Source of the DNA: Octopus sinensis
Lineage: Eukaryota
NCBI RefSeq assembly: GCF_006345805.1
Contig: NW_021833969.1
Coordinates: 1 to 52,216 of the forward strand
Reading direction: 5' to 3'
Length of the DNA: 52,216 nucleotides
Made by a program: the position numbers and the translations under genes. Positions within the stretch are counted from its first letter, which is position 1, and the number at the start of each line of letters is the position of its first letter. Below the pieces are notes generated by a model that saw nothing but the letters and a program-made list of their open reading frames with translations, was not told the DNA's origin and ran no database searches. Shown one piece after another: positions 778-49,815 of the stretch.

Positions 778-780
<3 letters not shown>

Positions 781-797
781 TGAGCTGTCAGAAACGT
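778..797 (+). mobile_element. tRNA-derived SINE, 5' fragment of the split copy (includes TSD tcagaaacgt 788-797)
   Basis: aggtgagctgtcagaaacgt matches the head (gcgagctggcagaa..gttagca) of uninterrupted copies at 22158 (+) and 10905-11001 (-). Confidence 0.75.
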
Positions 798-816
798 CAC
801 CCCACCGTTTGACGTC

Positions 817-1900
817 TCAGACATGCGTTGAGGCTAAGGCATCTCTGGCACCACCTGGAAGGTGATAAGGTGTGGAGTCCGCTGGCAGGGGGATTTTTCC
901 CGAGACCGGCCTCCTAAGTGAATTTTAAACCCGGTTACATCAAAAGATGGAAACTGACTCCATGGCAAAAGGAGTGCCGACAGGCACTCACGCTGATCCA
1001 CAAGGCGGGCAAGGCCGGCTGCGGAAATACCACCTCGGTATTTTATAGAGGGCTGGTAGAGGCAAAAAACGACGACGTCCTAGGAGGGGCTCTGGGGTTC
1101 GACGAAGACCAGCTTACCAACCTGTTTAAAAAAACTTTCAGGTCGGGGTATTTGGATAATTTCCAAAGATCCCTGGCCTGGCAGTGCTACAGGAATGCTT
1201 TACCTGTTCGCGAGAAGTTATCGCGGCACGGAGTTTCAGTGCCACCGACGTGTCCAAGGTGCGAGTTGGACGATGAAACCGTCCAGCACGCTTTTGTTCA
1301 CTGTCGGAAGTTGTCCGACTTGATAAGTTACGCAGAACACGTGTTATCGCATCTGGGACGAGTACAGCTGTCGGCTGAGTCTATGATTAAGATGATACCG
1401 CCAACTGGACTCTCGAAGGAAGGTAAGGCATATTTTCACTGCACGGTTGCAGTAGTAAAAGAATGCATGTGGAGAACAAGAATGGAAGGAGCCGCGATAG
1501 GATCCTTTGTCTCCGGCCCCGGCTTGCTCACTTACTTCAGATATCATCTGAAGAGCAAAATGGGGCTGGAAAAGAGGATCTTACCACGGGGTGTGTATGA
1601 GAAAAGATGGAAGGAAGTGGAAAAAAAGGTGGGTGTCAGAAGCCCAGCTTGACCATGGAGGAAGGAGAGGAAATAAAAGCTGCGGGGCCTCATAAATTGC
1701 CGGGGTGTAAAAACTCCAGTGAGATTATAAGTTCATGTACTGTTGTTTGTTCTACTGGTCATGTAAAGGACATTTATGTTAGAATGAATAATCCAAATGT
1801 AAATGAAAATTTTTAAACGAATCTCTTAAATGTTTTTTGTATATATGTCCTGTATTTGTCCTTCTGTGTAATCGATTTTTATAATCATAATAAAGAAATA
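817..1900 (+). mobile_element. 5'-truncated Tx1/L1-clade element D (ORF2 C-terminus plus 3' UTR)
   Basis: Starts at RHALRLRHLW (same motif at ~9622 in C). ORF 918-1652 has WQCYRNALPV and the CPRC..ETVQHAFVHC zinc finger. Ends AATAAAGAAATA. TSD cccaccgtttg[a/t]cgtc at 801-816 and 1901-1916. Confidence 0.9.
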
Positions 1901-2089
1901 CCCACCGTTTGTCGTCGGTCGTGGTTTTTTTACGCTCTGTAAAATTCGGTAAAAAAGAAAAAAGGACAAAAACTGAATTATTTTTATTGCGGAATTTTGA
2001 ACGTCGTTGATGCGGTTTCGCGTTTCGCTGGTTCTGCGCGTTACACTTTTTCTGTTCGGGCGGCCGTTTTCGGCCTGTCAGACAGGGAA

Positions 2090-3451
2090 ATGGACGACCA
2101 CTCCCTAGTGAAGGAGTCGGAGGAGGAATGGATATTTGAGACCTTGTCGGAGACATCGACCTCTGAAGACGAGCAAATCGGTGATGTAAATAATGTGGAG
2201 ATAAAAAACAGGAAAACGTATGCAGGAGTTGCAAAAAAGAAGACGGCACAGGAAAAGGAAATAAACCTAGAAAGATTGCCAGGTTTCCAGAGGTATATGA
2301 GGAAGGACAGCGGTGAGGTCGAACTGGCACCACCACCAAAGAGAAAGGAATGGTACGAGAAAAGGACCATCATATACAGGGTGTTCGCAAGCGAAAAGAA
2401 AAAGATAGAAGTGGTGAATATGGAATGGATAAATGAGGCGCTAAGAAGAACGGAAGAGGAAATCGAATTTCTTTCGAGAGGTTCAAAATATGGTACTGTA
2501 GTGGTACAGTTCAAAAGTGAGAAGGCAGCAAGGAAGATGGCGGCGAAGGTGGTGAAATCCGAGAAGGTAATACTTTTGCCTACATATCTAAATAGAAAAA
2601 TTACTAGAGCAAGGGTCGAGGGAGTGCCCCCAAACGTTGAGGCTGAGTGGATAGTGGCGGCTGTGATTAGCGGCCACGAAGCGGAAGTGGACATCCTCCA
2701 TGCCTCGGTTAAGACCGAGGGCTGGAGGGGCGTGACAGTGGAACTGAATGTGCAGGCAGAGAACGAGGTACTGGTGGACCTGGCGGAAAGCATCAGATTG
2801 GGAGACGTGATCATGAGAGTGTGGGTGGAGGGCAGGGCGCCCAGGTGCTATAAGTGTGGCCTGAGGGGTCACATAAGAGCCTTCTGCCCTCCCCCACCAA
2901 GAGAAAAGGAAATTGTTGCGGAACCCCCAAGGGAGGAAGAAAATAAAGAAGAGATCCAGACAGAGAAGGAAACGACAGAAGAAGAGATCCAGCAGGAGTG
3001 GGAAGAAGGAAGGAAAAAAAGAAAGAGAAGAAGGAGAAAGGCGAACAACACGGTAAATCAATCCATCCCAACACCACCCACACCCTCTGAGTCCCACCCT
3101 ATCCCTGCAGACAGTGAACCCACCCGCTCCCCTCCAACAAGAAAACAAAAAAGTAATACACACAGACAAGAGACTGAAACCGAATCCGGGCGCTTTGTTC
3201 TGTGTAGGTTAAAAAAAGAAAGAGAGGACATAAAAGACATATTAGAGGGTTATCCAGGGTATGAAAAGGGGGACTGGAAATATGCAATGGTGAAGAGGGA
3301 AGAAATGGATGAACTGTTAGTGTGGTGCGAAAATAGAAATGTGAAGGTGGAGGAGTGGGCAGTTGGGGATAAGATAAAGAATGTTTTTAAAAAAAGATAT
3401 GCGATGGACTTGGAGAATATGTTTATTGAAATTGGGGAGAACAATGGATGA
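2090..3451 (+). CDS. Intact Tx1-type ORF1 protein (453 aa) with CX2CX4HX4C zinc knuckle, element A
   Basis: ATG at 2090 aligns with the ATG of copy B. Knuckle CYKCGLRGHIRAFC. Core aligns with ORF1 of C (RGxKxGTVxVxF, VPPxVE, VEGRxPRC). Confidence 0.85.
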   Translation: MDDHSLVKESEEEWIFETLSETSTSEDEQIGDVNNVEIKNRKTYAGVAKKKTAQEKEINLERLPGFQRYMRKDSGEVELAPPPKRKEWYEKRTIIYRVFASEKKKIEVVNMEWINEALRRTEEEIEFLSRGSKYGTVVVQFKSEKAARKMAAKVVKSEKVILLPTYLNRKITRARVEGVPPNVEAEWIVAAVISGHEAEVDILHASVKTEGWRGVTVELNVQAENEVLVDLAESIRLGDVIMRVWVEGRAPRCYKCGLRGHIRAFCPPPPREKEIVAEPPREEENKEEIQTEKETTEEEIQQEWEEGRKKRKRRRRKANNTVNQSIPTPPTPSESHPIPADSEPTRSPPTRKQKSNTHRQETETESGRFVLCRLKKEREDIKDILEGYPGYEKGDWKYAMVKREEMDELLVWCENRNVKVEEWAVGDKIKNVFKKRYAMDLENMFIEIGENNG

Positions 3452-3626
3452 TAGGGTACGAAGGACAGGTAAGTGATGCTAGCGGATGGGGCCGTTAGCA
3501 TTACTTTCATAATATCATTTTCAATATTCATTTTTCATTCTTTGTAATTGTGATGTTCTATGTCCCCAATGTTTGTAGTGTCCCATCTGTGTAGCCCCTC
3601 GTGGGTAATAAAGAAATCAGAAACGT

Positions 3627-5300
3627 CAGCTGTGCGTTTGACGTCGGTCGTGTTTTTTTTACGCTCTGTAAAATTCGGTAAAAAAGAAAAAAGAACAAAA
3701 ACTGAATTATTTTTATTGCGGAATTTTGAACGTCGTTGATGCGGTTTCGCGTTTCGCTGGTTCTGCGCGTTACACTTTTTCTGTTCGGGCGGCTGTTTTC
3801 GGTCTGTCAGACAGAAGGAAATGGACTATGAGACCCTATCAGACTTGTCCACGACTGATGAGGAACTGGAACAGGCAGTGAGAATGAAGCTGAGTTATAC
3901 CTATGCCGGAGTGACCAAGAAGGCGGAAGAGAAAGGGGTAGACTTGGCCAAGCTGCCAAGTTTCCAGAAATATATGAAGAAGGACAGCGGTGAGGTCGAA
4001 CTAGCACCGACACCCAAGAGAAAAGAATGGTACGATAAAAGGACCATCATATACAGGGTGTTCGCAACCGAAAGGAAGAAGATAGAAGTTGTGAACATGG
4101 AGTGGATAGAGGAGGCGCTAAGAAGAACGGAAGAGGAGATTAATTTTCTGACGCGAGGGTCAAAGTATGGTACTGTAGTGGTACAGTTTAAAAGTGAGAA
4201 TGCAGCAAGGAAGATGGCGGCGAAGGCGGTGAAGTCCGAGAAGGTAATACTTTTGCCTACATATCTAAATAGAAGAATTACAAGAGTAAGGGTCGAGGGA
4301 GTGCCCCCAAACGTTGAGGCCGAGTGGATTGTGGCGGCTGTGATCAGCGGCCACGAGGAGGAAGTGGACATTCTCCATGCCTCGGTTAAGACCGAGGGCT
4401 GGAGAGGCGTGACAGTGGAACTGAACGTGCAGGCAGAGAACGATGTACTGGTGGACCTGGCGGAAAGCATCAGATTGGGAGACGTGATCATGAGAGTGTG
4501 GGTGGAGGGCAGAGCTCCACGTTGTTACAAGTGTGGCCTGAGGGGTCACATAAGAGCCTACTGCCCTCCCCCAGTGAAAGAAATGGATTTCGAACCACAG
4601 AGAGAGGAGGAAAAGGAGCAGAAACCAGAGGAGAAGGAGACAGTAGAAGAGGAAGAGAATACACAGGAATGGAAAGAAGCTGGGAAGGAGAGGAAGAGGA
4701 GAATAAGAGGAAAAGAAAATGACATAGAACACCAATCCATCCCAACACCACCCACACCCTCTGAGTCCCACCCTATCCCTGCAGACAGTGAACCCACCCG
4801 CTCCCCTCCAACAAGAAAACAAAAGAAAAAAATAATACAGACAGACAAGAGACTGAAATCGAACCCAGGCCGAACATTTGTATTATGACAGAACAGAAAG
4901 AAGTTAAAAGGCTAATGGAAGAGTATAAATGGTGTGAAGTTGGTGAAACCAGGTATGCTGTGATTGAAAAGAAGAGAATAGATGAGTTTGTGTTTAGGTG
5001 TGAAAGGGAGAATTGGGAGGTGAAAGACACAAGAATGAGCGATGAATTCGTGGAAAATATGGAGGAGTATTTCGGAGTAAGAATGGATATGGATGGTCTT
5101 CGTATTGGGAATGAACATTTCAGTGACAGTGAAAACCAAAGGACAGGTAAGTGATGCTAACGGATGGGGCTGTTAGCATCGCTTTCATATTATCATTTTT
5201 TCATGTAATAATTCATTCTTCATAAATTTAATTATAATGTTCTATGTCCCCAATGTTTGTAATGTCCCTTCTGCATCGCCCCTTGTGGGTAATAAAAAAA
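3627..5300 (+). mobile_element. ORF1-only non-autonomous Tx1-like retroelement, copy B
   Basis: Flanked by tcagaaacgt (3617-3626 and 5301-5310). 5' UTR nearly identical to A. Same ORF1-plus-3' UTR layout with no ORF2. Confidence 0.85.
3821..5154 (+). pseudogene. Tx1-type ORF1 of element B, one frameshift in the A-run at ~4821-4832
   Basis: ORF 3821-4888 carries the CCHC knuckle. The shifted frame resumes NTDRQETEIE (A has NTHRQETETE) and runs to TGA at 5152-5154. The frameshift could be a homopolymer sequencing error. Confidence 0.8.
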
Positions 5301-5352
5301 TCAGAAACGTTAGCACGCCGGGCGAAATGCGTAGCCGTATTTCGTCTGCCGC
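5301..5352 (+). mobile_element. tRNA-derived SINE, middle fragment of the split copy
   Basis: tcagaaacgttagcacgccgggcgaaatgcgtagccgtatttcgtctgccgc is colinear with intact SINE copies in the window. Confidence 0.85.
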
Positions 5353-5513
5353 ACATGTGTTCGTGGTAAGAATTGCTGTTTATTGGTGTTAATATTGTTA
5401 ATATCTGTTGTTTCTTGTTAAACTGTTGAATAACTTAACTGTTGGAGTTTTCAATTGAAAATACTTAGTGCTTGTGGTAGCACGCGTTGTTCATTCCCCC
5501 TTTGGGGGGAAGA

Positions 5514-7043
5514 ATGTCGTCTAGCATGGAGCCTACCGTTGGAGCAGAAATACTTGTTTCTCCTGTTGAGAGGAGGAAATACATGTCCGGCGAGGAGCCA
5601 ACTACAGACAAGGAAATATGGGTTTGCCCCGCTACAAGAAGGAATAGCAGAGAGGATAATATATTTGATATTTTTGGAGATGTGTCTGAGAGCTCGTCAG
5701 AACTTTCACCAGAAGAGTTTCCGACTTTGCTAGAGAACAAAGGCATTGTGTCGAAGAGAATAATTGATGTACCTAGCATCCAGATAGAACCAAAAAATAG
5801 AAAAAAAAGTTTTGCGTTGGCTGCTGGGGGTGGAACCCGGATACTGTCGACGAATAAAAGCGACTTTATGAAATACAGCCAAATGATGAAAATAACTGAC
5901 AACGGTGTGAAAATTGAACCTCCGCAAAAGTTATTACAAGAAGAAAAGCAAGAAACAATAATTTTCAAAACATATTGTCTACAAAAAAGAAAAATTGAAA
6001 GAATGTCAGAAGAGAAAATAGAAAAGTGCTTAAAGCCAATATGGGGCGACGTAGTATATCTGAGAAGAGGAAAAAAATTCGGAACGGTGGAAGTAAGGTT
6101 CACCAATAAAGAAATAGCACACAAGAACTCAATTGAAACGCTGAAAACGAACGACGTGGAGCTCATCCCCTATTATATGGGGATGAGGACGTCGAGAATA
6201 AAAATTACAAGGGTCCCGCCAGAGGTCGAACCTATGTAGTTGTTGGCGGCAGTCCTAATCAAAGAGGTAGAAAAAATTACTCTCCTCCAGGCTACCGCTA
6301 CGGAAAACCCACGCTGGGATGGTCAAACAATTAATCTTCTCATTCAAGCGGACCCTAAAATAATTCAAGCTATTCCCGAGACAATTGAGGTAGGGGAGGA
6401 GAACCTCGTGGTGTTTGTTGAGGGCCGAAAACCTCGATGTTTTTTATGTGGTCAATTAGGCCACATTCGAAGGAACTGCAAGGAAAATGAAGAAGAGGAG
6501 GAAGAGGAGAAAAAAGACAAAGAGGAAGAAGATAAAGAAGAAACAGATGAGAAAAAAAACAACAAACAAAAGAAAAATACAACCAGCAACCCAGCCGAGA
6601 GCGGCGACTACTACAGAACAACGACCAAAAAGACTGCCAGAAGAGAAAAAGAAGAAAAAGGCATAATAGCCGTATACACTAAAGATACTGAGCTCATGAG
6701 AGACATTCAACTCATAAAGACTGTAAAAAAAATTGATAACCTTTCAGAGGAATTTATCAATTACGACATATATGAAGTCTCAAATAAGACTTATAGAATT
6801 CCACAAAATAAATACAGAAAGACTGTATCTTCATTGAGATTAGATTTTAACAAGTCGATATTTCATGGATTACCAGCTCCGATCCCGCGAGAAAAGGAAA
6901 AGGTGGAGATTCCCCCTCCACCTGATAATTCTGTGTCGGTGGTGAGACGGGATTTTGACAAATCTATTTCCCAAGACCGTCCACCTCCGATCCTGGATCA
7001 AAAACAGGTGGAGGGTCCCCCTCCACCGGACAATCCTAATTAA
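5514..7043 (+). pseudogene. ORF1 of element C with one premature stop (6237-6239)
   Basis: ORFs 5487-6239 and 6240-7043 share a frame. The TAG aligns to the W of EAEWIVAAV in A and B. Knuckle CFLCGQLGHIRRNC. Confidence 0.85.
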
Positions 7044-7054
7044 ACAGGTAAGTG

Positions 7055-10000
7055 ATGGCTATTCACATTGGTTGTTTAAATGTTCATGGCCTGTTGTCAA
7101 GCTGGAAGCAAGGACGCTTTCTGAATGACATCAGGTCGAGAAATTTGGATGTAATTGTTGCAACGGAAACCCGGGTGAAGGGGCCAAGAGATCTGCTCCC
7201 CCTCCTGAACGGCTACGAGAAATACGTTTCTCCGAGTCGGGCAGGAGGTGGGGGTGGGGTGTTGGTCCTACTAAAAAGAAACCGGGTAGCCGAGAAAAAG
7301 TTGGTTTTTTCTGACCCAGAAGGCAGGCTGGTCGTTCTCGACTTGACATTCAGTTGTGGCAAGACAATCAGGCTGGTCGCTATTTACGCACCAAACATTA
7401 TTGGCCCGCAAACTGAATATTTTCGTGGCCTAGGAAAGTTCCTAGCCACGTCGCATTCACTAGTAGTGTTAGGAGACTCTAATACAATATGTGCAGCACA
7501 CACAGATTGTGTTGGCTCAAACTCGAACATGAACAGAAAATGTAACCCAGGCTTTCGGGATCTGCTAAGTCAATTTCAGCTAGCAGATCCATATAGGTTG
7601 GAGCACCCGAACATTCCACAATGGACGTGGTCAAATAGTGACGGGTCTACCAGAACATATCTAGATAGGATTTTAATTAGAGAAAAAGATAAGTCCATAG
7701 TTGAGTGTCCACAGTTTTTTCTAGTCAGCTACAGTGACCACAAGATGGTTACCTGTAAACTGACGGTAGATAAGTTGCATAGACAGGGATCTGGCTACTG
7801 GAAACTCAATACGTCCCTTTTGGCGATTGAGGAGTACAGAAAGCGGATCAAGATGTTAATACAGAGGCATTAACAGGTACCATCATTAATAACAAATGGT
7901 GGTACGCCCTAAAAAGAGCCATCAAATATGAGTCTATTAGGTTTAGCATAAGTTTAGCTAAGAAGGGACGTAAAATAGGAGATGGTCTAGTTAAGGAACT
8001 AGAAGAAGCCTGGAGGACTGGTAATACAGACCAAGCGAGGGTGAAAAGAATGGAGTTAAACCAGCATCTTGAAGCCCACCATATGGGAAGTATTACCAGA
8101 GCTAAGTTACGTGCAATGGGAAGTGAAGGAATCAAAGCCGCTGGATGGGCCCGAGTGGTGGAAGCTCGGCAAGGAAATAGTTCTTCTATTCGGTCTTTGA
8201 CGAATCAAAATGGTGTCTTGATAAACGAACCCGAGAAAATGTGTGAGGTCTTTCGGGAGTACTTCGCCCAGCTGTTCGGGGGTGACGGCGGTCCTGGTGG
8301 TGGGAGAGCCCTAGAGGACTTTCTTACCGGGCTGCCGTGCCTCTCGGGGTCGGATGCGGAGTCTTGCGAAGGGCCAATCACACCTGAGGAGGTGATGGAG
8401 GCTTTGGCCGATTGTAAAGCGGGTAAGTCACCGGGACTTGATGGTCTTCTGTACGAGCTATATAAATGTATGCCAGACTTGTTCGGGCAACTACTGACTG
8501 ACGTGTACGCGAACTGGAAACAGAATGGGTTTATCCCCAGATCTGTGCGCCGGGGAGTAGTGACGTTGGTCAGAAAGGACCCGGACAAGGGGGACGTTCT
8601 AGAGAATTTCAGGCCCATCACTCTGTTAAACGCAGAAGTGAAGATTTTGGCCAAGGTTCTAGCAAAAAGGTTGGCGCGTGTCGCGAATGGTATAGTCGGG
8701 GAGGCACAGACATGTGCCATCCCAGGCAGAACCATTCAGGATACCCTCCATCTTATTCGCTATACCATAGAGAGGTTTGGTAATAAATCTGGCAAAGGGG
8801 GGGGGCATTGGTGCATTTGGACCAGTCTAAAGCTTTTGATAGGGTTGACCATCGATACCTAGCGACTGTACTTGCGCGGTTTGGCCTGGGCCTTGGCTTC
8901 CTCAGGTGGTTTATCGCTTTGTACCACAACATTGACTCGATAGTTCGGGTGAACGGTTTCCTTTCGAAGCCGTTCTGCATCAGACGCTCGGTTCGTCAAG
9001 GATGTCCGCTTTCACCACTTTTGTATGTGATGGCTCTCGAGCTATTACTGCAAAGGTTGAGTGGCATCCCGAGAGAACCAGGACTAGAGGAGTTTGTTAC
9101 GGCTTTCGCGGATGATATCACTATCAGTGTAACCACAGTGGCACGCCTACGTGAAGTAGGTAAGACTATTGAGGCTTACGAGGAGGTAGCAAGAGCAAAG
9201 ATTAACCGGGAAAAGTCGGTCGGCTTGCAGCTCGGCACCTGGGTTGGCAAGTCGATGCCTTCAGACAGTGTTGTTAGGCGCTGGACGGAGGGACCGGTTA
9301 AGTTGCTGGGAGTCTGGTTTGGACCAGGCCTCCAGATAGAGAAGAACTGGACGGAGGTATTGAGCAGGGTGGCTGCAGTAGTCAAGACCTGGTCTTGGCG
9401 GTGGCTATCCCTGAAAGGGAGGGCGGAGGTGGCCAATGTGTTTATCGCATCGGTCATTACCTACCGCCTGACCGTCGTGCTCTGTCCGGATTCGTGGTTG
9501 ATCAGGTTGGAGAGACAGCTCTTTCGCTTTTTGTGGAAGGGCAGGTCGCCACTTGTGAAACGCTCTGTCTGCTGTCAAAAGCCTTTAAAGGGAGGTTTAG
9601 GGAAGCCTTGGTTAATGATGCGCAGACATGCGTTGAGGTTGAGGCACCTCTGGATTCTCCTGGATAGTGAACGGGTGTGGTCTCCGCTAGCCAGACAAAT
9701 GTTCCCTGAGTTCAAGAGTTTTTGCGAACAGGAAGCCTGGTGTTCTCGTAGACCGAGGTCGAGTGAGTGGCATAAAGAGTGCCGTAAGGCCCTCTTGCTG
9801 TTCCGGCGCTCGGGCAACGCCAGCGGTGGGGGTTCCACACGGATTTTATATAGTGGGTTGGTAGAGTCTGAACGGGACGATGGCCTTGGGTCGACTCTAG
9901 GTCTCGGATTTATTCAACTGGACAGCTTGTTTCATCGTACATTCGGGTTGAGAACGTTGGACAACTTCCAAAAGTCCTTAACCTGGCAATGCTACAGAGG

Positions 10001-10460
10001 TGCCTTGCCCGTTTGGGATAAGCTCGCAAGACATGGTAAACGTCAGTCGCCGACCTGTCCAAGATGCGGGGGGGGGGGCAGGGAAACCGTCCCTCACGCT
10101 ATTGTTCAGTGTCCGGAGATAACTGAAATGTGGGCTTATGCTGAACCTCTGTTGTCCGGCGAAGGAAGAGTACGGCTGTCGACTGAATCAATTATAAAAA
10201 TTGACCCAGCGGGAGTTCTAACGAACGAAGGTGAGAATTGTTTTCTCACGGTTGTAGCAATAGCAAAAGAGGCAGTATGGAAGACTAGGATAAAAGGAAT
10301 TAAGACAGGCAACTTTATCTCTGGTGACAATTTACGATCCTTTTTTTCTTTTCATTTGAAAAGGAAACTGTGGCTGGAGAAGAGGTGTCTGTCAGAGTGT
10401 ACGTTCCAAAAGAGATGGAAGTATGTTGCACGAGTGCTGTGCGTGCAAGGAACCGTGTGA
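7055..10460 (+). pseudogene. ORF2 of element C (APE endonuclease, RT, C-terminal CCHC); frameshifts at ~7865 and ~8797-8805
   Basis: APE motifs GCLNVHG, ATET, GDSN, LDRIL, SDH. YWKLN linker. RT motifs KSPGLDG, FRPITLLN, DQSKAFDRV, VRQGCPLSP, FADD. C-terminal CPRC..ETVPHAIVQC. Confidence 0.92.
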
Positions 10461-40299: not shown

Positions 40300-43200
40300 T
40301 CGATGGCAATCCCTCAAGGTCGAGGATGATGGTCTTCGCGCAAATCTCCTGGTGATTCCGCAGGTGACTGATGAGACCAATTTTTGCTCGAAAAGGTCGG
40401 TCGCAGTGCGGACATCTAGTGCCGGAAGGGAATGTCGCACGTGGTTGTTGTTGGCGCTCCTTCTTCCGTCGTCGTCTTTTCTCCTCCAGCTCTGCAGACC
40501 TTTTCGACTCGAAAGTCGCCGTTCCCTCATGGATGGTGGTTTTCCAGAGTGGTCTGTTTTTTGCCGTTTCCTCCCAGTTGGTGAAGTCAATGTCACACTT
40601 TTTGAGGTTCGTTTTCAGGGAGTCCTGTAGCGTTTCTCCTCGCCTCCTTTTGTACGCTTGCCGTCTTTGAGTTGGGAGTAGAAGATCTGTTTGGGAAGTC
40701 GTTCGTCAGTCATTCTCACCACGTGGCCGCTCCATCTTAGTTGGCCTTTGATGACATAGGCTTCGATGCTGGTCATTTTTGCTTCTTGTAGCACACTGAC
40801 GTTAGTTCTTCTGTCTTCCCAGCTGATGTTGAGGATCTTCCGAAGACAGCGTTGGTGAAATTTCTCGAGCGTTTTCAGGTGGTGACTATACGGGGTCCAA
40901 ATTTCGGATGCGTAAAGGAGGGTTGGAATAATGACTGCCCTGTACACCATGAGTTTGGTTTCGGTTCGGATGTCCCGATCAGCAAAAACTCTTGTTCGAA
41001 GCTTGCCGAAAGCTGTTCCTGCACACTTCAGACGGTGTTGGATTTCATCGCTGAGGTCTACCTTTGCTGACAGATGGCTCCCAATGTAGCAAAAGTGGTT
41101 CACATTTTCCAGTGGAATTCCTTCGAGTTGAATCGATGGCGGGTTGTCAACACGGGCATTGGGAGGAGGTTGGTAGAGTAAGTGAGTCTTCTTGATGTTG
41201 ATGCTCAATCCAATTTTAGTATATGCATGATGGAAAGCATTTAGGATCTGTTGGAGGTGATCCTCTCTGTGAGTTGCAACACTGTTGTCGTCGGCATATT
41301 GGAACTCTAGCAAGCTTCGTGCCATTGTCTTTGACGTACTTTTGAGGCGAGCGAGGTTGAAAGGCTTGCCGTCTATTCTGTACGAGATCTTGATGCCAGG
41401 TGGAAGGTCATTTCGTATGATGTGCAACACTGTCTGCAAAAGTTCACAGAGAGGATCACCTCCAACAGATCCTAAATGCTTTTCATCATGCATATACTAA
41501 AAGGGGCTAGAAAAGGTGCCCTAAACATAGTCTGCTTCACCCCAATCCTGTCTGGAAAACCGCGTCCAGAGGGATCACCATTATGCGGTCGAAAATCAAG
41601 ATCAAGATACGCAACGCTGAAATTCGGGACCTGGAATGTCAGGACTCTCATAGATAACACCAACTCAGACAGACCCGAAAGGCAAACTGCAATCATCGCT
41701 CGGGAACTCCATCGATTCAATTTTGACATCGTAGCTCACAGTGAAACCCGGAGAGCCGGAGAAGGCCGGCTGAGAGAAGAAGGCGGTCAATACACCTTTT
41801 TCTGGAAAGGTTACGATCCCGACCATCAACAGATCCATGGTGTGGGTTTTGCAATACGAAACACCATCCTATCCAAACTGACAGAGCAGCCCATCGGAAT
41901 GTCCGCACGACTCATGACCCTCCGAATCCAGCTTGTCGAAAGTCAGCACGCAACTATCATCAGCGCGTATGCTCCCACCTTTGACGCGGAGGATTTAGTC
42001 AAGGAAGACTTTTACAGCCAGCTCGTTAGCATTCTCTCTACCGTCCCAATGGACGACAAGACCATTCTCCTGGGAGATTCAATACCAGAGTTGGGAGAGA
42101 TCGTGAACTCTGGACAGGAACCATCGGAAAGGAAGGAGTGGGAAAAGTCAATGCCAATGGAACTCTGCTGCTCACCAAATGTGCTGAACATAACCTGGTG
42201 ATAACCAACACCCTTTTTCGCCAGAAGAATCGATATAAGGTCTCATGGCAGCATCCAAGATCTAAAAAATGGCATCTCATCGACTATATCATCGTGAGAT
42301 CCCGAGACCAGCAAGATGTGTTGCTCACCAGAGCCGCCACTGGAGCAGATGAGTGCTGGACAGATCATTGGCTCATCGCCTCTAACCATGAAAATCAAAC
42401 TCCGACCAAAAGTGAAATATCACAGCAAGGAAAGCAGAGTAAAGAAATTCAACATCGAAGCACTGCAAGACAAAAACTCGTGTCGCTTTCCAGCAGCGCC
42501 TACAGGTCAATCTTCAAAATAAGACTCCAAATCATCTCGTCGAAGAAAATTGGAACCAGCTGAAAGAAACCATCATCACCGCTTGCGAAGAAACCATCGG
42601 TCGCAAGAAAAGGAAACACGAGGACTGGTTTGACGACAATGATGAAGCTCTCAAAGAACTGATCGACCAAAAATGGAAAGCTTTCATCAGCTCACAGAAT
42701 GATCCAAAGTCTGCCACTAAACGAGAGTCTTTCAAGAAGTGCAAAGCCGCAGTTCAAAGGACAACCCGTACCCTGAAGAACCAGTGAGGGAGACACAAAT
42801 CTCGTGAAATCCAGAAGTTAGCAGATGTAAACGACACCAGAGGGTTCTTCAAAGCCACGAAAGAAATATACGGACCTTCCACACATGGACAGGCTCCTCT
42901 GAAGAGTAAAGACGGAGCAACCATCCTGAAAAGCAACACCGAAATAGGAGACAGATGGAGAGAACACTTCGATGACTTCCTCAATCACAAAGCTACCATC
43001 GACAAAAGTATACTTGACATGATTCCTAAAGAGGCCAAAGATTACTCTCTCGCTCGAATTCCATCCCTCGAAGAGGTCAAAATTGCTATCACAGCGATGA
43101 AGAACAACAAAGCCGCGGGTCCTGACGGAATCCCATCTGAGATCTACAAACTGGGAGGTGATTTTGTCCAACACCAGCTCCACCAACTCTTGGTCAAAAT

Positions 43201-48979: not shown

Positions 48980-49815
48980 CTCGCTACCTTATCCTTCATA
49001 ATAATAATAATCCATTTCTACTATAGGCACAGGGCCTGAAAGTTGGGAGACGGAGGATAGTCGATTACTTCGACCCCAATATTCAACTGGTACTTATTTT
49101 ATCGACCCCGAAAGAATAAAAGGCCAAGTCGACCTCGGCGGAATTTGAACTCACAACGTAGCGACAGATGAAATATCGCTAAGTATTTCGCCCGGCGTGC
49201 TAACGATTCAACCAGCTCACAGAGAGAGAGAGAGAGAGGGGTGGGGTGAATGGTTGTATAGATCACAAATCTTAAAATGTTTGTAGAAGCCTTTTTAAGC
49301 GTTGGTTCGTAAGTTGCTAAATAAGATTCCTTACGGTGGAGTCACCCCTTTAACATTAATGTTGTATGTTGTAGTTGATATAAAGAAGAGAAGCGTTTCA
49401 GAAATATGACAGACGAGTCTTTTTCTCAGATGAAAATGTTTTATTTAACAACAATAAAATAAATAACTGAGTCACAGAGAAAAAATTACAACAGCAGAGA
49501 AACAACATAGAATAATCACTCTTTGAATATTACATTGGGAAAGCAAATACATAAACTTGTCTTTGTGTGCAACAGAATATTTCAGAAAATATATTAAGCA
49601 GAAGAAGGATTAAAATGATGCGAATGTGTATATGTATATATGTGATAAATATTTTGCATTTCCGAGCTGAACAATGGTATATGCTAATGAAAAAGATAAA
49701 CTCTGAAATAAGAAAATTTAACGCCGGTTTTTACATTGTAAAATGTGCCAGAGTGTTAGCATTGTGGTCAGTTAAAAACACTACAACGGACAGGTCAATT
49801 GTTTGTTTTCTTACA
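48980..49815. repeat. Duplicated ~1 kb block, copy 2 (contains a minus-strand tRNA-SINE at ~48995-49220)
   Basis: Colinear with 11220-12213. Confidence 0.85.

What the first reader, a model, noticed from the sequence alone, without database searches (positions are those of the whole stretch)
798..5300. ORF1-only, RT-less Tx1-like retroelements that still transpose site-specifically
Seen: A and B each have a 5' UTR, one gag-like CCHC ORF1, a short 3' UTR and their own TSD, with no ORF2. Their ORF1 aligns with ORF1 of autonomous C but only at roughly a third identity by eye, so they are not recent deletion products of C. A's ORF1 is fully open (453 aa), and A and B differ enough to be separate subfamilies. 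Known: ORF1-only non-autonomous LINE derivatives exist (HAL1 from L1; HeT-A), and Tx1-clade elements are often sequence-specific. Inference: this is a self-perpetuating half-Tx1 lineage that keeps its own RNA-binding ORF1 and borrows ORF2 in trans. I cannot tell from here whether it has been described.
Basis: partly seen in the sequence, partly recalled or inferred. Interest (0 to 1): 0.9.

Follow-up and report, generated by a model that had tools for sequence, protein, structure and literature searches.

The report
RT-less ORF1-only LINEs targeting an octopus SINE
Two neighbouring octopus retrotransposons have lost their reverse-transcriptase gene but kept a selected RNA-binding gene, and they and a relative in another octopus species sit at exactly the same spot of a common short repeat, so they look like a long-lived parasite-of-a-parasite lineage comparable to HAL1 in mammals and HeT-A in flies.

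Summary
The window is octopus DNA. A (801-816 plus 1901-3616) and B (3631-5300) are full-length non-LTR elements. Each has a 5'UTR, one ORF1 (predicted fold: two RRM-like domains; CCHC knuckle read from the sequence), the ORF2 start codon, then directly the 3'UTR and an AATAAAGAAA tail. There is no ORF2.

Both lie at the same nucleotide of one SINE copy, flanked by three copies of TCAGAAACGT(C/T)AGC. A third element, D, in Octopus sinensis has the same layout and the same deletion joint. It has its own TSD at the same SINE position, yet its ORF1 is only about 50% identical to A's.

ORF1 is under purifying selection (A-B core dN/dS 0.15). A 15-bp hairpin spanning the deletion joint kept its pairing through four compensatory changes.

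In an ORF1 tree, all five members of the A clade whose 3' side is visible lack ORF2. The sister clade (C, and tandem copies in O. vulgaris) has ORF2.

One correction: 817-1900 is a separate 5'-truncated LINE nested in A's 5' end, not A's UTR.

Not tested: genome-wide copy number, identity of the ORF2 donor, Repbase/Dfam status, and Tx1-versus-L1 placement.

The parts
779..800 (-). Left end of the host SINE copy (SINE is antisense to the + strand). Bases 788-800 (TCAGAAACGTCAC) are the upstream TSD copy of A.
   Evidence: Read (D10). Alignment of the joined flanks with other SINE copies of the window.
801..816 (+). First 16 nt of element A, which is also the upstream TSD copy of the nested element E0 (CCCACCGTTTGACGTC).
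   Evidence: Direct repeat with 1901-1916, one mismatch.
817..1900 (+). E0: a 5'-truncated autonomous-type LINE nested in A. It holds the ORF2 C-terminus (918-1652, open to its stop), a 3'UTR and the tail AATAAAGAAATA. It is not part of A.
   Evidence: Pfam zf-RVT E=1.5e-10. 64% nt identity to C ORF2. 48-55% aa identity to ORF2 of L009 and L010.
1901..3616 (+). Element A (the body continues from 801-816). 5'UTR 1901-2089; ORF1 2090-3451 (453 aa, open); inter-ORF motif with the ORF2 ATG 3465-3478; 3'UTR; tail AATAAAGAAA 3607-3616. No ORF2.
2090..3451 (+). A ORF1. N-terminal acidic region, two RRM-like domains (about aa 90-250), CCHC knuckle (CYKCGLRGHIRAFC), E/K-rich linker, conserved P-rich motif (PTPPTPSESHPIPADSEPTRSPPTRKQK), and a C-terminal domain of about 85 aa.
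   Evidence: AF2 model: core pLDDT 75-87. Foldseek best hits are tandem-RRM proteins at E about 1e-4. 324 homologues at E<=1e-3. No Pfam hit for A itself.
3471..3506 (+). 15-bp hairpin AAGUGAUGCUAGCGG-AUGGGG-CCGUUAGCAUUACUU across the ORF2-deletion joint. The 5' strand comes from the inter-ORF spacer plus the ORF2 ATG. The 3' strand comes from the 3'UTR.
   Evidence: MFE -22.7 kcal/mol, z = -5.2, 0 of 200 shuffles as good. Four pairs keep pairing through changes on both sides between A/B and D.
3617..3630 (+). TCAGAAACGTCAGC: downstream TSD of A and upstream TSD of B.
   Evidence: D10.
3631..5300 (+). Element B. 5'UTR 3631-3820; ORF1 3821-4888; frameshifted C-terminal domain 4885-5154; inter-ORF motif 5143-5156; hairpin 5149-5184; tail AATAAAAAAA 5291-5300. 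No ORF2.
5301..5314 (+). TCAGAAACGTTAGC: downstream TSD of B. It runs on into the SINE (5315-5336).
5337..5352 (+). Upstream TSD of C (GTATTTCGTCTGCCGC). The downstream copy is at 10705-10720 (GTATTTCGCCTGCCGC).
   Evidence: Read.
5353..10704 (+). Element C: an autonomous-type relative, now degenerate. ORF1 5514-7043 has one in-frame stop at 6237. The inter-ORF motif is at 7044-7057. ORF2 runs from 7055 to 10460, broken into at least 3 frames. The tail is GGGCAATAAAGAAATTC. It sits in the same SINE copy, 22 bp downstream of the A/B site.
   Evidence: Pfam zf-CCHC, Exo_endo_phos, RVT_1, zf-RVT. Closest solved structure is human L1 ORF2p, E=9e-19. 55% identity to an Argonauta hians protein.
10721..10790 (-). 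Remainder of the host SINE copy.
   Evidence: alignment with SINE copies at 10870-11460 and 49090-49260.

Best explanation
A and B are full-length copies of two subfamilies of a non-autonomous LINE lineage of the L1/Tx1 group in octopus.

An ancestor lost ORF2 by one internal deletion. The deletion ran from about codon 2-3 of ORF2 to about 40 nt past its stop. It left the 5'UTR (presumed internal promoter), ORF1, the stop/start inter-ORF motif and the 3'UTR with its tail.

The lineage then diversified as an ORF1-only element, to about 50% ORF1 amino-acid divergence between A/B and D.

Proposed mechanism:
- The RNA is translated into ORF1p, a protein predicted to have two RRM-like domains, with a CCHC motif.
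- ORF1p presumably coats its own RNA in cis.
- An ORF2 protein (endonuclease plus RT) made by an autonomous relative recognises the shared 3' end (..CCCYYGTGGGYAATAAAGAAAT).
- That protein carries out target-primed reverse transcription.

Integration of the A/B/D family occurs antisense into an abundant SINE, at GCTGG^CAGAAACGTTAGC. It produces a 13-14 bp (possibly up to 19 bp) TSD that regenerates the target. A second insertion therefore gives the head-to-tail A-B pair.

Shown: the anatomy, the TSDs, the same site in two species, purifying selection on ORF1, the shared deletion joint with a covarying hairpin, and the clade structure.

Inferred: trans-mobilisation, the identity of the donor, a cis role of ORF1p, and current activity.
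For: Layout and missing ORF2.

Inter-ORF motif: the 14-nt motif is identical in A, B and C (D16). It is conserved as AGGTAAGTGATG in three autonomous O. vulgaris copies.

Third member: D in O. sinensis has the same layout. Its ORF1 is 49% identical to A over 343 aa and is followed directly by the junction and a 74%-identical 3'UTR. No ORF2 hit occurs in 20 kb.

Same target: D is flanked by CAGAAACGTTAGC / CAGAAATGTTAGC inside another SINE copy, in the same orientation. SINEs make up 11.6% of the O. vulgaris genome (PMC13282606), and the SINE unit is about 230 bp (D2). A random insertion would therefore hit a given SINE nucleotide and orientation with p <= about 2.5e-4. Three of three A/B/D insertions do so.

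Selection: A-B core (207 codons) has dS 0.277, dN 0.043, omega 0.15. The excess of synonymous changes has p = 1.2e-9. For A-D, pS is 0.78 and pN 0.27.

Hairpin across the joint: z = -5.2 (A), -5.0 (B), -3.3 (D). Four compensatory pairs separate A/B from D. One is a T>C change inside the otherwise invariant inter-ORF motif, matched by A>G in the 3'UTR strand. By eye, the inter-ORF motif of the O. vulgaris elements has no complement in their 3'UTR, while C's does (see evidence against); local folds were run for C and the O. vulgaris elements only.

ORF1 tree: (A, B, D) has 92% bootstrap. It groups with L003, P0147 (element G), P0124 and P0126, apart from (C, F, P0125) at 82%. In the A grouping, A, B, D, L003 and G all lack ORF2. 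C and the F copies have it.

Shared 3' tail with autonomous elements of Octopus and Argonauta: (D12).

ORF1 fold: tandem RRM-like domains.
Against: - Only four to five ORF2-less copies from three or four genomes were seen. No genome-wide census was possible, so copy number and recent activity are unknown.
- No autonomous element inserted at the A/B/D site was found. C and a 75-bp A-tailed fragment in O. bimaculoides sit at a second SINE site 35 bp away. The source of the site-1 specificity is therefore unexplained.
- A/B identity is mosaic (5'UTR 97% against synonymous divergence 0.28). This implies recombination or gene conversion. Some ORF1 conservation could thus have been imported from autonomous elements.
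- An autonomous element with an A-type ORF1 could exist unsampled.
- In C, the inter-ORF motif could pair with C's own 3'UTR (9 bp by eye). A structure-guided recurrent deletion is therefore not fully excluded.
- Deep nodes of the NJ tree are weakly supported.
Confidence: 0.8

Rival explanations
1. Recurrent dead-on-arrival deletion products. Autonomous masters with A-type ORF1 exist but were not sampled. Their RNAs repeatedly lose ORF2 at the same place, for example when the RT jumps across a long-range stem that brings the ORF2 start and the 3'UTR together. Selection on ORF1 and on the stem would then act in the autonomous masters, not in an ORF1-only lineage.
For: - In C, the inter-ORF AAGUGAUGG can pair with UCAUCGCUU of its own 3'UTR (read).
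- L003, whose ORF1 is about as close to C (43%) as to A (40%), has a similar joint.
- The mosaic A/B identity shows that exchange between lineages happens.
- Sampling of autonomous elements is tiny: C, E0, L009 and L010.
Against: - A/B and D share the joint to the nucleotide, although their synonymous sites are saturated.
- The O. vulgaris autonomous elements have no complement to the motif in their 3'UTR, so the long-range stem is not conserved (comparison by eye).
- All five A-grouping members with a visible 3' side lack ORF2, and none of the sister-clade members do.
- No A-type ORF1 was ever seen next to an ORF2.
Confidence: 0.13
2. A local artefact. One element lost ORF2 by a genomic deletion at this locus and was then tandemly duplicated. 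A and B would be paralogous copies that never transposed in this form.
For: A and B are adjacent and head to tail. They share a 14-bp repeat that unequal crossing-over could also produce. Their 5'UTRs are 96-97% identical.
Against: - D has the same ORF2-less layout at an unrelated locus in another species, with its own TSD.
- L003 and G are further ORF2-less relatives.
- A and B differ by whole modules: the N-terminus and the C-terminal domain are about 45-55% identical against 91% in the core. Uniform post-duplication decay cannot give this pattern.
- dN/dS of 0.15 is incompatible with neutral decay of two dead copies.
Confidence: 0.02
3. A domesticated ORF1-derived host gene, analogous to L1TD1. 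Purifying selection would then reflect a host function rather than a role in transposition.
For: Open 453-aa ORF, omega of 0.15, and NCBI gene models on relatives.
Against: - There are several diverged copies, each with a LINE 5'UTR, 3'UTR, tail and TSD. They are inserted in SINEs and arranged in tandem.
- B and D carry frameshifts.
- The gene models are partial or chimeric TE annotations.
Confidence: 0.02

Closest known systems
HAL1 (half-L1) of mammals (Bao & Jurka 2010, Gene 465:9; cited in PMC4494074)
   Same: A non-autonomous LINE derivative that keeps the 5' region, ORF1 and 3' end, lacks ORF2, and has amplified as such using the ORF2p of autonomous relatives.
   Different: HAL1 derives from mammalian L1, whose ORF1p is of the coiled-coil, RRM and CTD type (from my own knowledge). 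It inserts without sequence specificity. Here ORF1p is predicted to have two RRM-like domains followed by a CCHC motif, the host is a cephalopod, and the A/B/D family uses one nucleotide position of a SINE.
HeT-A and other ORF1-only telomeric Jockey-clade elements of Drosophila (PMC13534243)
   Same: ORF1-only elements that depend on the ORF2 of related families. They show repeated or inherited ORF2 loss within a target-specialised group, form head-to-tail arrays, and ORF1-only lineages give rise to new ORF1-only lineages.
   Different: They belong to the Jockey clade, their target is chromosome ends, and they are mutualists of the host. Here the group is L1/Tx1, the target is an interspersed SINE, and no host role is apparent.
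Tx1L of Xenopus and other target-specific Tx1-clade LINEs (Keno, Kibi, Koshi; Kojima & Fujiwara 2004, as summarised in PMC4494074)
   Same: APE-type LINEs with ORF1 and ORF2 that insert at a defined sequence inside another repeat (Tx1L into the Tx1D DNA transposon). The autonomous relatives here (C, F) have the APE, RT and zf-RVT architecture.
   Different: Those are autonomous elements. Their targets are a DNA transposon, snRNA genes or microsatellites, not a SINE. Tx1-clade membership of the octopus elements was not tested by phylogeny here.
Internal-deletion non-autonomous LINEs without coding capacity (Bov-A, Vingi derivatives; PMC4494074)
   Same: They arise by internal deletion, keep the LINE 5' and 3' ends, and are mobilised in trans.
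   Different: They encode nothing. A, B and D keep a selected ORF1.

Membership tests
Non-LTR (LINE-type) retroelement inserted by TPRT | Target-site duplications flanking each copy, a defined 3' tail, no LTRs | tested here: met
   13-14 bp TSDs for A and B, and 13-19 bp for D. The tail is AATAAAGAAA(T). Joining the flanks restores one SINE copy.
ORF1-only non-autonomous LINE (HAL1-like kind) | ORF1 present and ORF2 absent in several independent copies | tested here: met
   A, B, D and L003 have ORF1 followed directly by the 3'UTR. G has a truncated ORF1. No ORF2 similarity was found.
ORF1-only non-autonomous LINE (HAL1-like kind) | ORF1 kept under purifying selection after loss of ORF2 | tested here: met
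   Omega is 0.15 for A-B. For A-D, pN is 0.27 with saturated pS. The shared joint and the compensatory changes in the joint-spanning hairpin place this evolution after the deletion. Caveat: recombination with autonomous elements is not excluded.
ORF1-only non-autonomous LINE (HAL1-like kind) | Amplified to a multi-copy family; mobilised in trans by an autonomous partner | not testable with these tools
   No octopus genome could be searched by DNA. Only loci reached through annotated proteins were seen. The shared 3' tail with autonomous C, F and L009 is indirect support.
HAL1 family proper (L1-derived, mammals) | ORF1 homologous to mammalian L1 ORF1p (coiled coil, RRM, CTD) | tested here: not met
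   No PDB sequence hit to L1 ORF1p. The model shows two RRM-like domains, and a CCHC motif follows them in the sequence. So it works like HAL1 but is not a member.
L1/Tx1 group (autonomous relatives C, E0, F) | ORF2 with an APE endonuclease, RT and a C-terminal zf-RVT cysteine motif; RT closest to L1-type | tested here: met
   Pfam PF03372, PF00078 and PF13966 in C, and PF13966 in E0. The best solved-structure match is human L1 ORF2p at E=9e-19, against R2 at 5e-10.
Tx1 clade specifically | RT phylogeny groups the element with Tx1L, Keno and similar references rather than with L1 proper | not tested
   No reference Tx1 sequences were available. Indirect support: L1-Tx1 is the only L1-like class listed among recently active O. 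vulgaris LINEs (PMC13282606).
Sequence-specific LINE | Independent insertions at the same nucleotide of the same target sequence | tested here: met
   A, B (window) and D (O. sinensis) all lie at GCTGG^CAGAAACGTTAGC of the SINE, in the same orientation. The sample is three insertions. More distant ORF2-less relatives (L003, G) lie elsewhere.

The most novel reading that the evidence does not exclude
A whole clade of reverse-transcriptase-less, ORF1-only LINEs has persisted and diversified in octopods over a long period (ORF1 has diverged to about 50% identity between copies found in different Octopus genomes). It has evolved its own cis-element, a hairpin created by the deletion joint. It also has an integration site (SINE site 1) that differs from the sites used by the sampled autonomous relatives. 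If that difference is real, target choice would be set in part by the non-autonomous element's own RNA or ORF1p, and not only by the borrowed ORF2 endonuclease.
Probability: 0.15. Interest if true: 0.8.

Novelty: new variant of a known kind. Interest (0 to 1): 0.58.

Why it matters
ORF1-only LINE derivatives are known from only a few settings, namely HAL1 in mammals and the HeT-A-type telomeric elements in flies. They bear on an open question: what does ORF1p do for a LINE RNA that must borrow its reverse transcriptase?

A cephalopod lineage offers a compact natural system for that question. It combines ORF2 loss, sustained selection on ORF1, a covarying RNA hairpin at the deletion joint, and single-nucleotide target specificity inside a SINE. 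With it one could test cis-preference, 3'-end recognition and target choice in L1/Tx1-type elements.

It also matters for octopus genome annotation. At least two NCBI gene models (LOC118767527 and LOC106871568) are fragments or chimeras of these elements. SINE copies act as landing pads that build nested and tandem LINE arrays.

Tried and rejected
- A full-length A ORF1 query in the word-indexed protein search found nothing. Low-complexity words probably swamped the candidate list. The exhaustive search and a trimmed-core profile did find relatives.
- Exact look-up of A ORF1 found nothing on record. The same held for P0126, P0124, P0127 and P0153.
- Scans of metagenome and prokaryote-genome collections with the ORF1 profile returned only unrelated CCHC knuckles.
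- Two DNA-pattern scans of viral contigs gave zero hits.
- No further A/B copy exists in the window.
- L004 and L011 (Logan contigs) hold degenerate ORF1 copies, but the contigs end before the 3' side, so they are uninformative.
- Splicing origin, rejected. The inter-ORF motif CAG|GTAAGT is a perfect 5' splice-site consensus. However, it is retained in A, B and D, and the deletion ends have no GT..AG. The elements are therefore not processed copies of an RNA spliced at that donor.
- Shared endonuclease motif between SINE site 1 and site 2: only 5 of 16 positions match, against about 4 expected. Not convincing.
- Hairpin search in autonomous elements: the local folds of C and the O. vulgaris elements differ, and the Argonauta inter-ORF spacer was not folded.
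- The L009 ORF1 was translated in the wrong frame in the tree, so its position there must be ignored.
- The literature searches found no description of ORF1-only or SINE-targeting LINEs in cephalopods. Repbase and Dfam could not be consulted.

Full report
**What the window is.** The region is eukaryotic repeat-rich DNA. The ORF2-type protein of element C is most similar to proteins of octopods (55% to Argonauta hians; other hits from Octopus). The ORF1 relatives that carry names are from Octopus sinensis and O. bimaculoides. A C-like fragment in O. bimaculoides is 90% identical at the DNA level. I did not determine the species.

**Anatomy of 779-10790**. One copy of an abundant SINE lies antisense to the + strand. 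It has been hit four times.

Joining 779-800, 5315-5352 and 10721 onward gives a continuous SINE that aligns with the empty copies at 10870-11460 and about 49100-49260.

The order of parts is:
- SINE start, with TCAGAAACGTCAC at 788-800.
- The first 16 nt of A (801-816).
- E0 (817-1900).
- The rest of A (1901-3616).
- TCAGAAACGTCAGC (3617-3630).
- B (3631-5300).
- TCAGAAACGTTAGC (5301-5314), running on into the SINE.
- GTATTTCGTCTGCCGC (5337-5352).
- C (5353-10704).
- GTATTTCGCCTGCCGC (10705-10720).
- The rest of the SINE.

E0 is a 5'-truncated LINE that holds only the last 244 codons of an ORF2 (zf-RVT). It is flanked by CCCACCGTTTG(A/T)CGTC, so it landed 16 bp inside A. It is not A's 5'UTR.

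The upstream and middle TSD copies both read GTCA where the SINE has GTTA. This suggests that B inserted first and that A inserted later into B's upstream TSD copy. That order fits the state of the ORFs: A's ORF is intact and B's is frameshifted.

**The elements.** A has a 190-nt 5'UTR and a 453-codon open ORF1 (2090-3451). About 13 nt after the stop comes ACAGGTAAGTGATG, then 140 nt of 3'UTR ending in GTGGGTAATAAAGAAA. B has the same plan. A frameshift at about 4885 puts its C-terminal domain in another frame.

The 14-mer is identical to the ORF1-stop/ORF2-start junction of C (7044-7057), where the ATG opens ORF2 (family D16). The core AGGTAAGTGATG is also present at the ORF1/ORF2 junction of three autonomous copies in O. 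vulgaris. A looser version (GGTAAGT...GTGATAATG) is present in an Argonauta element.

A and B therefore retain the ORF2 start codon and then jump to sequence that is homologous to the 3'UTR of C about 40 nt past the ORF2 stop. They are precise ORF2-deletion derivatives.

Pfam finds APE, RT and zf-RVT in C, and nothing of the kind in A or B. tblastn with C's ORF2 pieces finds nothing in A or B.

**ORF1 protein.** Pfam does not recognise A's ORF1. The exhaustive HMMER search finds 324 relatives.

An AlphaFold model built on a small alignment is confident for residues 90-270 (pLDDT 75-87). Its best structural matches are tandem-RRM proteins: SFPQ/NONO, U2AF65, IMP3 and hnRNP A1, at E about 1e-4. 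A canonical CX2CX4HX4C knuckle follows.

A proline-rich motif (PTPPTPSxSHPxPAD..PT.S.PTRKQK) is conserved in A, B and D. A looser version occurs in P0124.

So "gag-like RNA-binding ORF1" is a fair description. Identity to C's ORF1 is 27-30%.

**More copies elsewhere.** The closest relative, LOC118767527 of O. sinensis, lies in locus L001. There the full ORF1 (384 codons, 49% identical to A) is followed by a short remnant of the C-terminal region. Next comes GGACAGGTAAGCGATG, then a 3'UTR 74% identical to A's, and the tail AATAAAGAAA. Twenty kb around it hold no ORF2.

This element, D, sits antisense in a different SINE copy at the same nucleotide. Upstream it reads gagctggCAGAAACGTTAGCacgccg|tgtttgac. 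Downstream it reads aaagaaaTCAGAAATGTTAGCacgccgggcg. Its 5' end (GTGTTTGACACTTCGTG-T7) is homologous to the 5' ends of A and B, so all three are full length.

A Logan contig (L003) holds a degenerate ORF1 that is followed by AACAGGTTCGATG, a 3'UTR and AATAAAGAAA within 1.5 kb. Again there is no room for ORF2.

In O. bimaculoides (L002), element G has ORF1 cut after the second RRM and joined to the same kind of 3'UTR and tail. Another element start follows head to tail. The NCBI model LOC106871568 splices the two.

**Is the shared site chance?** SINEs make up 11.6% of the O. vulgaris genome (PMC13282606), and the unit is about 230 bp. The chance that a random insertion hits one given SINE nucleotide in one orientation is therefore at most about 2.5e-4. 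A, B and D all do.

C, and a 75-bp 5'-truncated copy with an A-like tail in O. bimaculoides (TSD GGTATTTAACCYAGCT), use a second site 35 bp downstream in the SINE. The SINE thus carries two landing sites for this LINE group. I found no convincing sequence motif common to the two sites.

**Selection.** Over the 207-codon RRM-CCHC core, A and B differ by 32 synonymous and 20 non-synonymous changes. This gives dS 0.277, dN 0.043 and omega 0.15, with a binomial p of 1.2e-9 against neutrality. Between A or B and D, synonymous sites are saturated (pS 0.76-0.78) while pN is 0.26-0.27.

**Evidence that this evolution took place in ORF2-less elements.**

First, A, B and D share the deletion joint to the nucleotide (ATG|YTANCNGATGGGG).

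Second, the joint forms a 15-bp hairpin, AAGUGAUGCUAGCGG-AUGGGG-CCGUUAGCAUUACUU. Its 5' strand comes from the inter-ORF spacer and the ORF2 ATG. Its 3' strand comes from the 3'UTR. The hairpin is far more stable than shuffled sequence in A, B and D (z = -5.2, -5.0 and -3.3). Between A/B and D, four pairs changed on both sides and stayed paired. One of these is a T>C change inside the motif that is otherwise invariant in autonomous elements. The local folds of C and the O. vulgaris element differ. By eye, the O. vulgaris element has no complement to the motif in its 3'UTR.

Third, in a neighbour-joining tree of the ORF1 core, A, B and D group at 92% bootstrap. Together with L003, G (P0147), P0124 and P0126 they form a grouping apart from C, F and P0125 (82%). 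Every member of the first grouping whose 3' side is visible lacks ORF2. C and F have it. Deep nodes are weak, and L009 was mistranslated in that run and should be ignored.

**Mechanism proposed.** Transcription starts at the element's 5' end. The three full-length copies begin within a few nucleotides of each other.

ORF1p is made and binds the RNA. An ORF2 protein from an autonomous relative recognises the 3' end and performs target-primed reverse transcription at the SINE site.

The last 25-45 nt (TGTCC...GCCCYYGTGGGYAATAAAGAAAT) are shared with C, F and the Argonauta element. That points to stringent-type 3' recognition by a related RT.

Because the TSD regenerates the target, repeated hits yield head-to-tail pairs. 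The autonomous relatives also form tandem arrays: three full-length copies in O. vulgaris.

Trans-mobilisation, the cis role of ORF1p and the function of the hairpin are all inferences.

**Open problems.**
- Which ORF2 supplies site-1 specificity is unknown. None of the four autonomous insertions seen is at site 1.
- A/B identity is mosaic: 5'UTR 96-97% and the P-rich segment about 97-100%, against dS 0.28 in the core and about 45-55% in the N-terminus and C-terminal domain. Local gene conversion between the adjacent copies, template switching between subfamilies, or nucleotide-level constraint could each contribute. This weakens any simple dating.
- Copy number and present activity are unknown.

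**Comparison and novelty.** In function this matches HAL1 (ORF1-only L1 derivatives) and the ORF1-only telomeric Jockey-clade elements of Drosophila. In those, ORF2 loss is recurrent and ORF1-only lineages beget new ones (PMC13534243). It also matches the target-specific habit of Tx1-clade LINEs (PMC4494074).

It is not a member of HAL1, because the ORF1 type differs. Tx1-clade placement was not tested. The RT is L1-like, and L1-Tx1 is the only L1-like class listed among recently active O. vulgaris LINEs.

The literature held here does not describe ORF1-only or SINE-targeting LINEs in cephalopods. Automated repeat libraries may already contain these consensi, and I could not check Repbase or Dfam.

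I rate it a new variant of a known kind, of moderate-to-good interest.

Noticed in passing
window 817-1900: E0 is a 5'-truncated autonomous-type LINE nested 16 bp inside A's 5' end. It holds the ORF2 C-terminus, which is still open over 244 codons, a 3'UTR and the tail AATAAAGAAATA. Its TSD is CCCACCGTTTG(A/T)CGTC. It is only 64% identical to C at the DNA level, so it belongs to a different family, and its target is not the SINE.
   Followed up: partly
window 7044-7057, 3465-3478, 5143-5156; L010 4052, 9331, 14616; L001 10896: The conserved inter-ORF motif (A)CAGGTAAGTGATG is at once a perfect metazoan 5' splice-site consensus (CAG|GTAAGT) and a stop/start cassette. TAA and TGA occur in two frames, with UGAUG overlapping the ORF2 AUG. 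This suggests termination-reinitiation for ORF2 in the autonomous elements. In B, the frameshifted ORF1 C-terminal frame ends exactly at that TGA.
   Followed up: partly
window 1906-2085 vs 3635-3814, and 3061-3190 vs 4735-4865: The 5'UTRs of A and B are 96-97% identical, and a 130-nt proline-rich coding segment is nearly identical. Synonymous divergence in the ORF1 core between them is 0.28, and the flanking modules are about 50% identical. The cause could be gene conversion between the tandem neighbours, subfamily recombination, or nucleotide-level constraint. This is unresolved.
   Followed up: partly
window 788-816 and 3617-3645: Both upstream TSD copies read ACGTCA where the SINE has ACGTTA. 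The element 5' ends carry TGACGTC a few bases further on. Two CRE-like half-sites therefore sit at the 5' junction. This may be coincidence, or it may be relevant to transcription.
   Followed up: no
L010 (O. vulgaris OX597840.1, 31864384-31881409, reversed): Three head-to-tail, full-length, apparently intact autonomous C-like elements with a period of about 5.28 kb. They are separated by 9-bp repeats (AACCCGACA / CACTGATAA / CACCCGATA), and each 5'UTR holds a long internal A-run.
   Followed up: partly
L002 9530-9612 (minus strand), O. bimaculoides: A 75-bp, severely 5'-truncated copy whose tail is 88% identical to A's. It is inserted at the same SINE position as C (site 2), with a 16-bp TSD. 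A-type 3' ends are therefore also used at the site where C inserted.
   Followed up: partly
L001 10001-10729 and L002 10001-10881: The NCBI gene models LOC118767527 (O. sinensis) and LOC106871568 (O. bimaculoides) are TE-derived. The first is an N-terminally truncated reading of D's ORF1. The second splices a truncated ORF1 (element G) to the start of the next element through a predicted intron.
   Followed up: yes
L009 10255-10650 (Argonauta hians): The autonomous element there has its 3'UTR and tail present twice. The second copy is about 350 bp and 5'-truncated, lying about 140 bp downstream. This is another case of stacked insertions in this LINE group. The element's 17-bp TSD (TATTTTTAAAATTTGTA) is not in a SINE.
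   Followed up: no
window 10870-11460; 24000-26000; 19500-21300; 26500-28400; 40600-42600: - Three SINE units in tandem, spaced about 230 bp.
- A 2-kb block of 7.7% GC simple repeat.
- Several fragments of other LINE families with RT- or APE-like ORFs. Identified by eye only, for example YVDDLKL at 26518-27495 and an APE-like ORF at 41476-42201.
   Followed up: no
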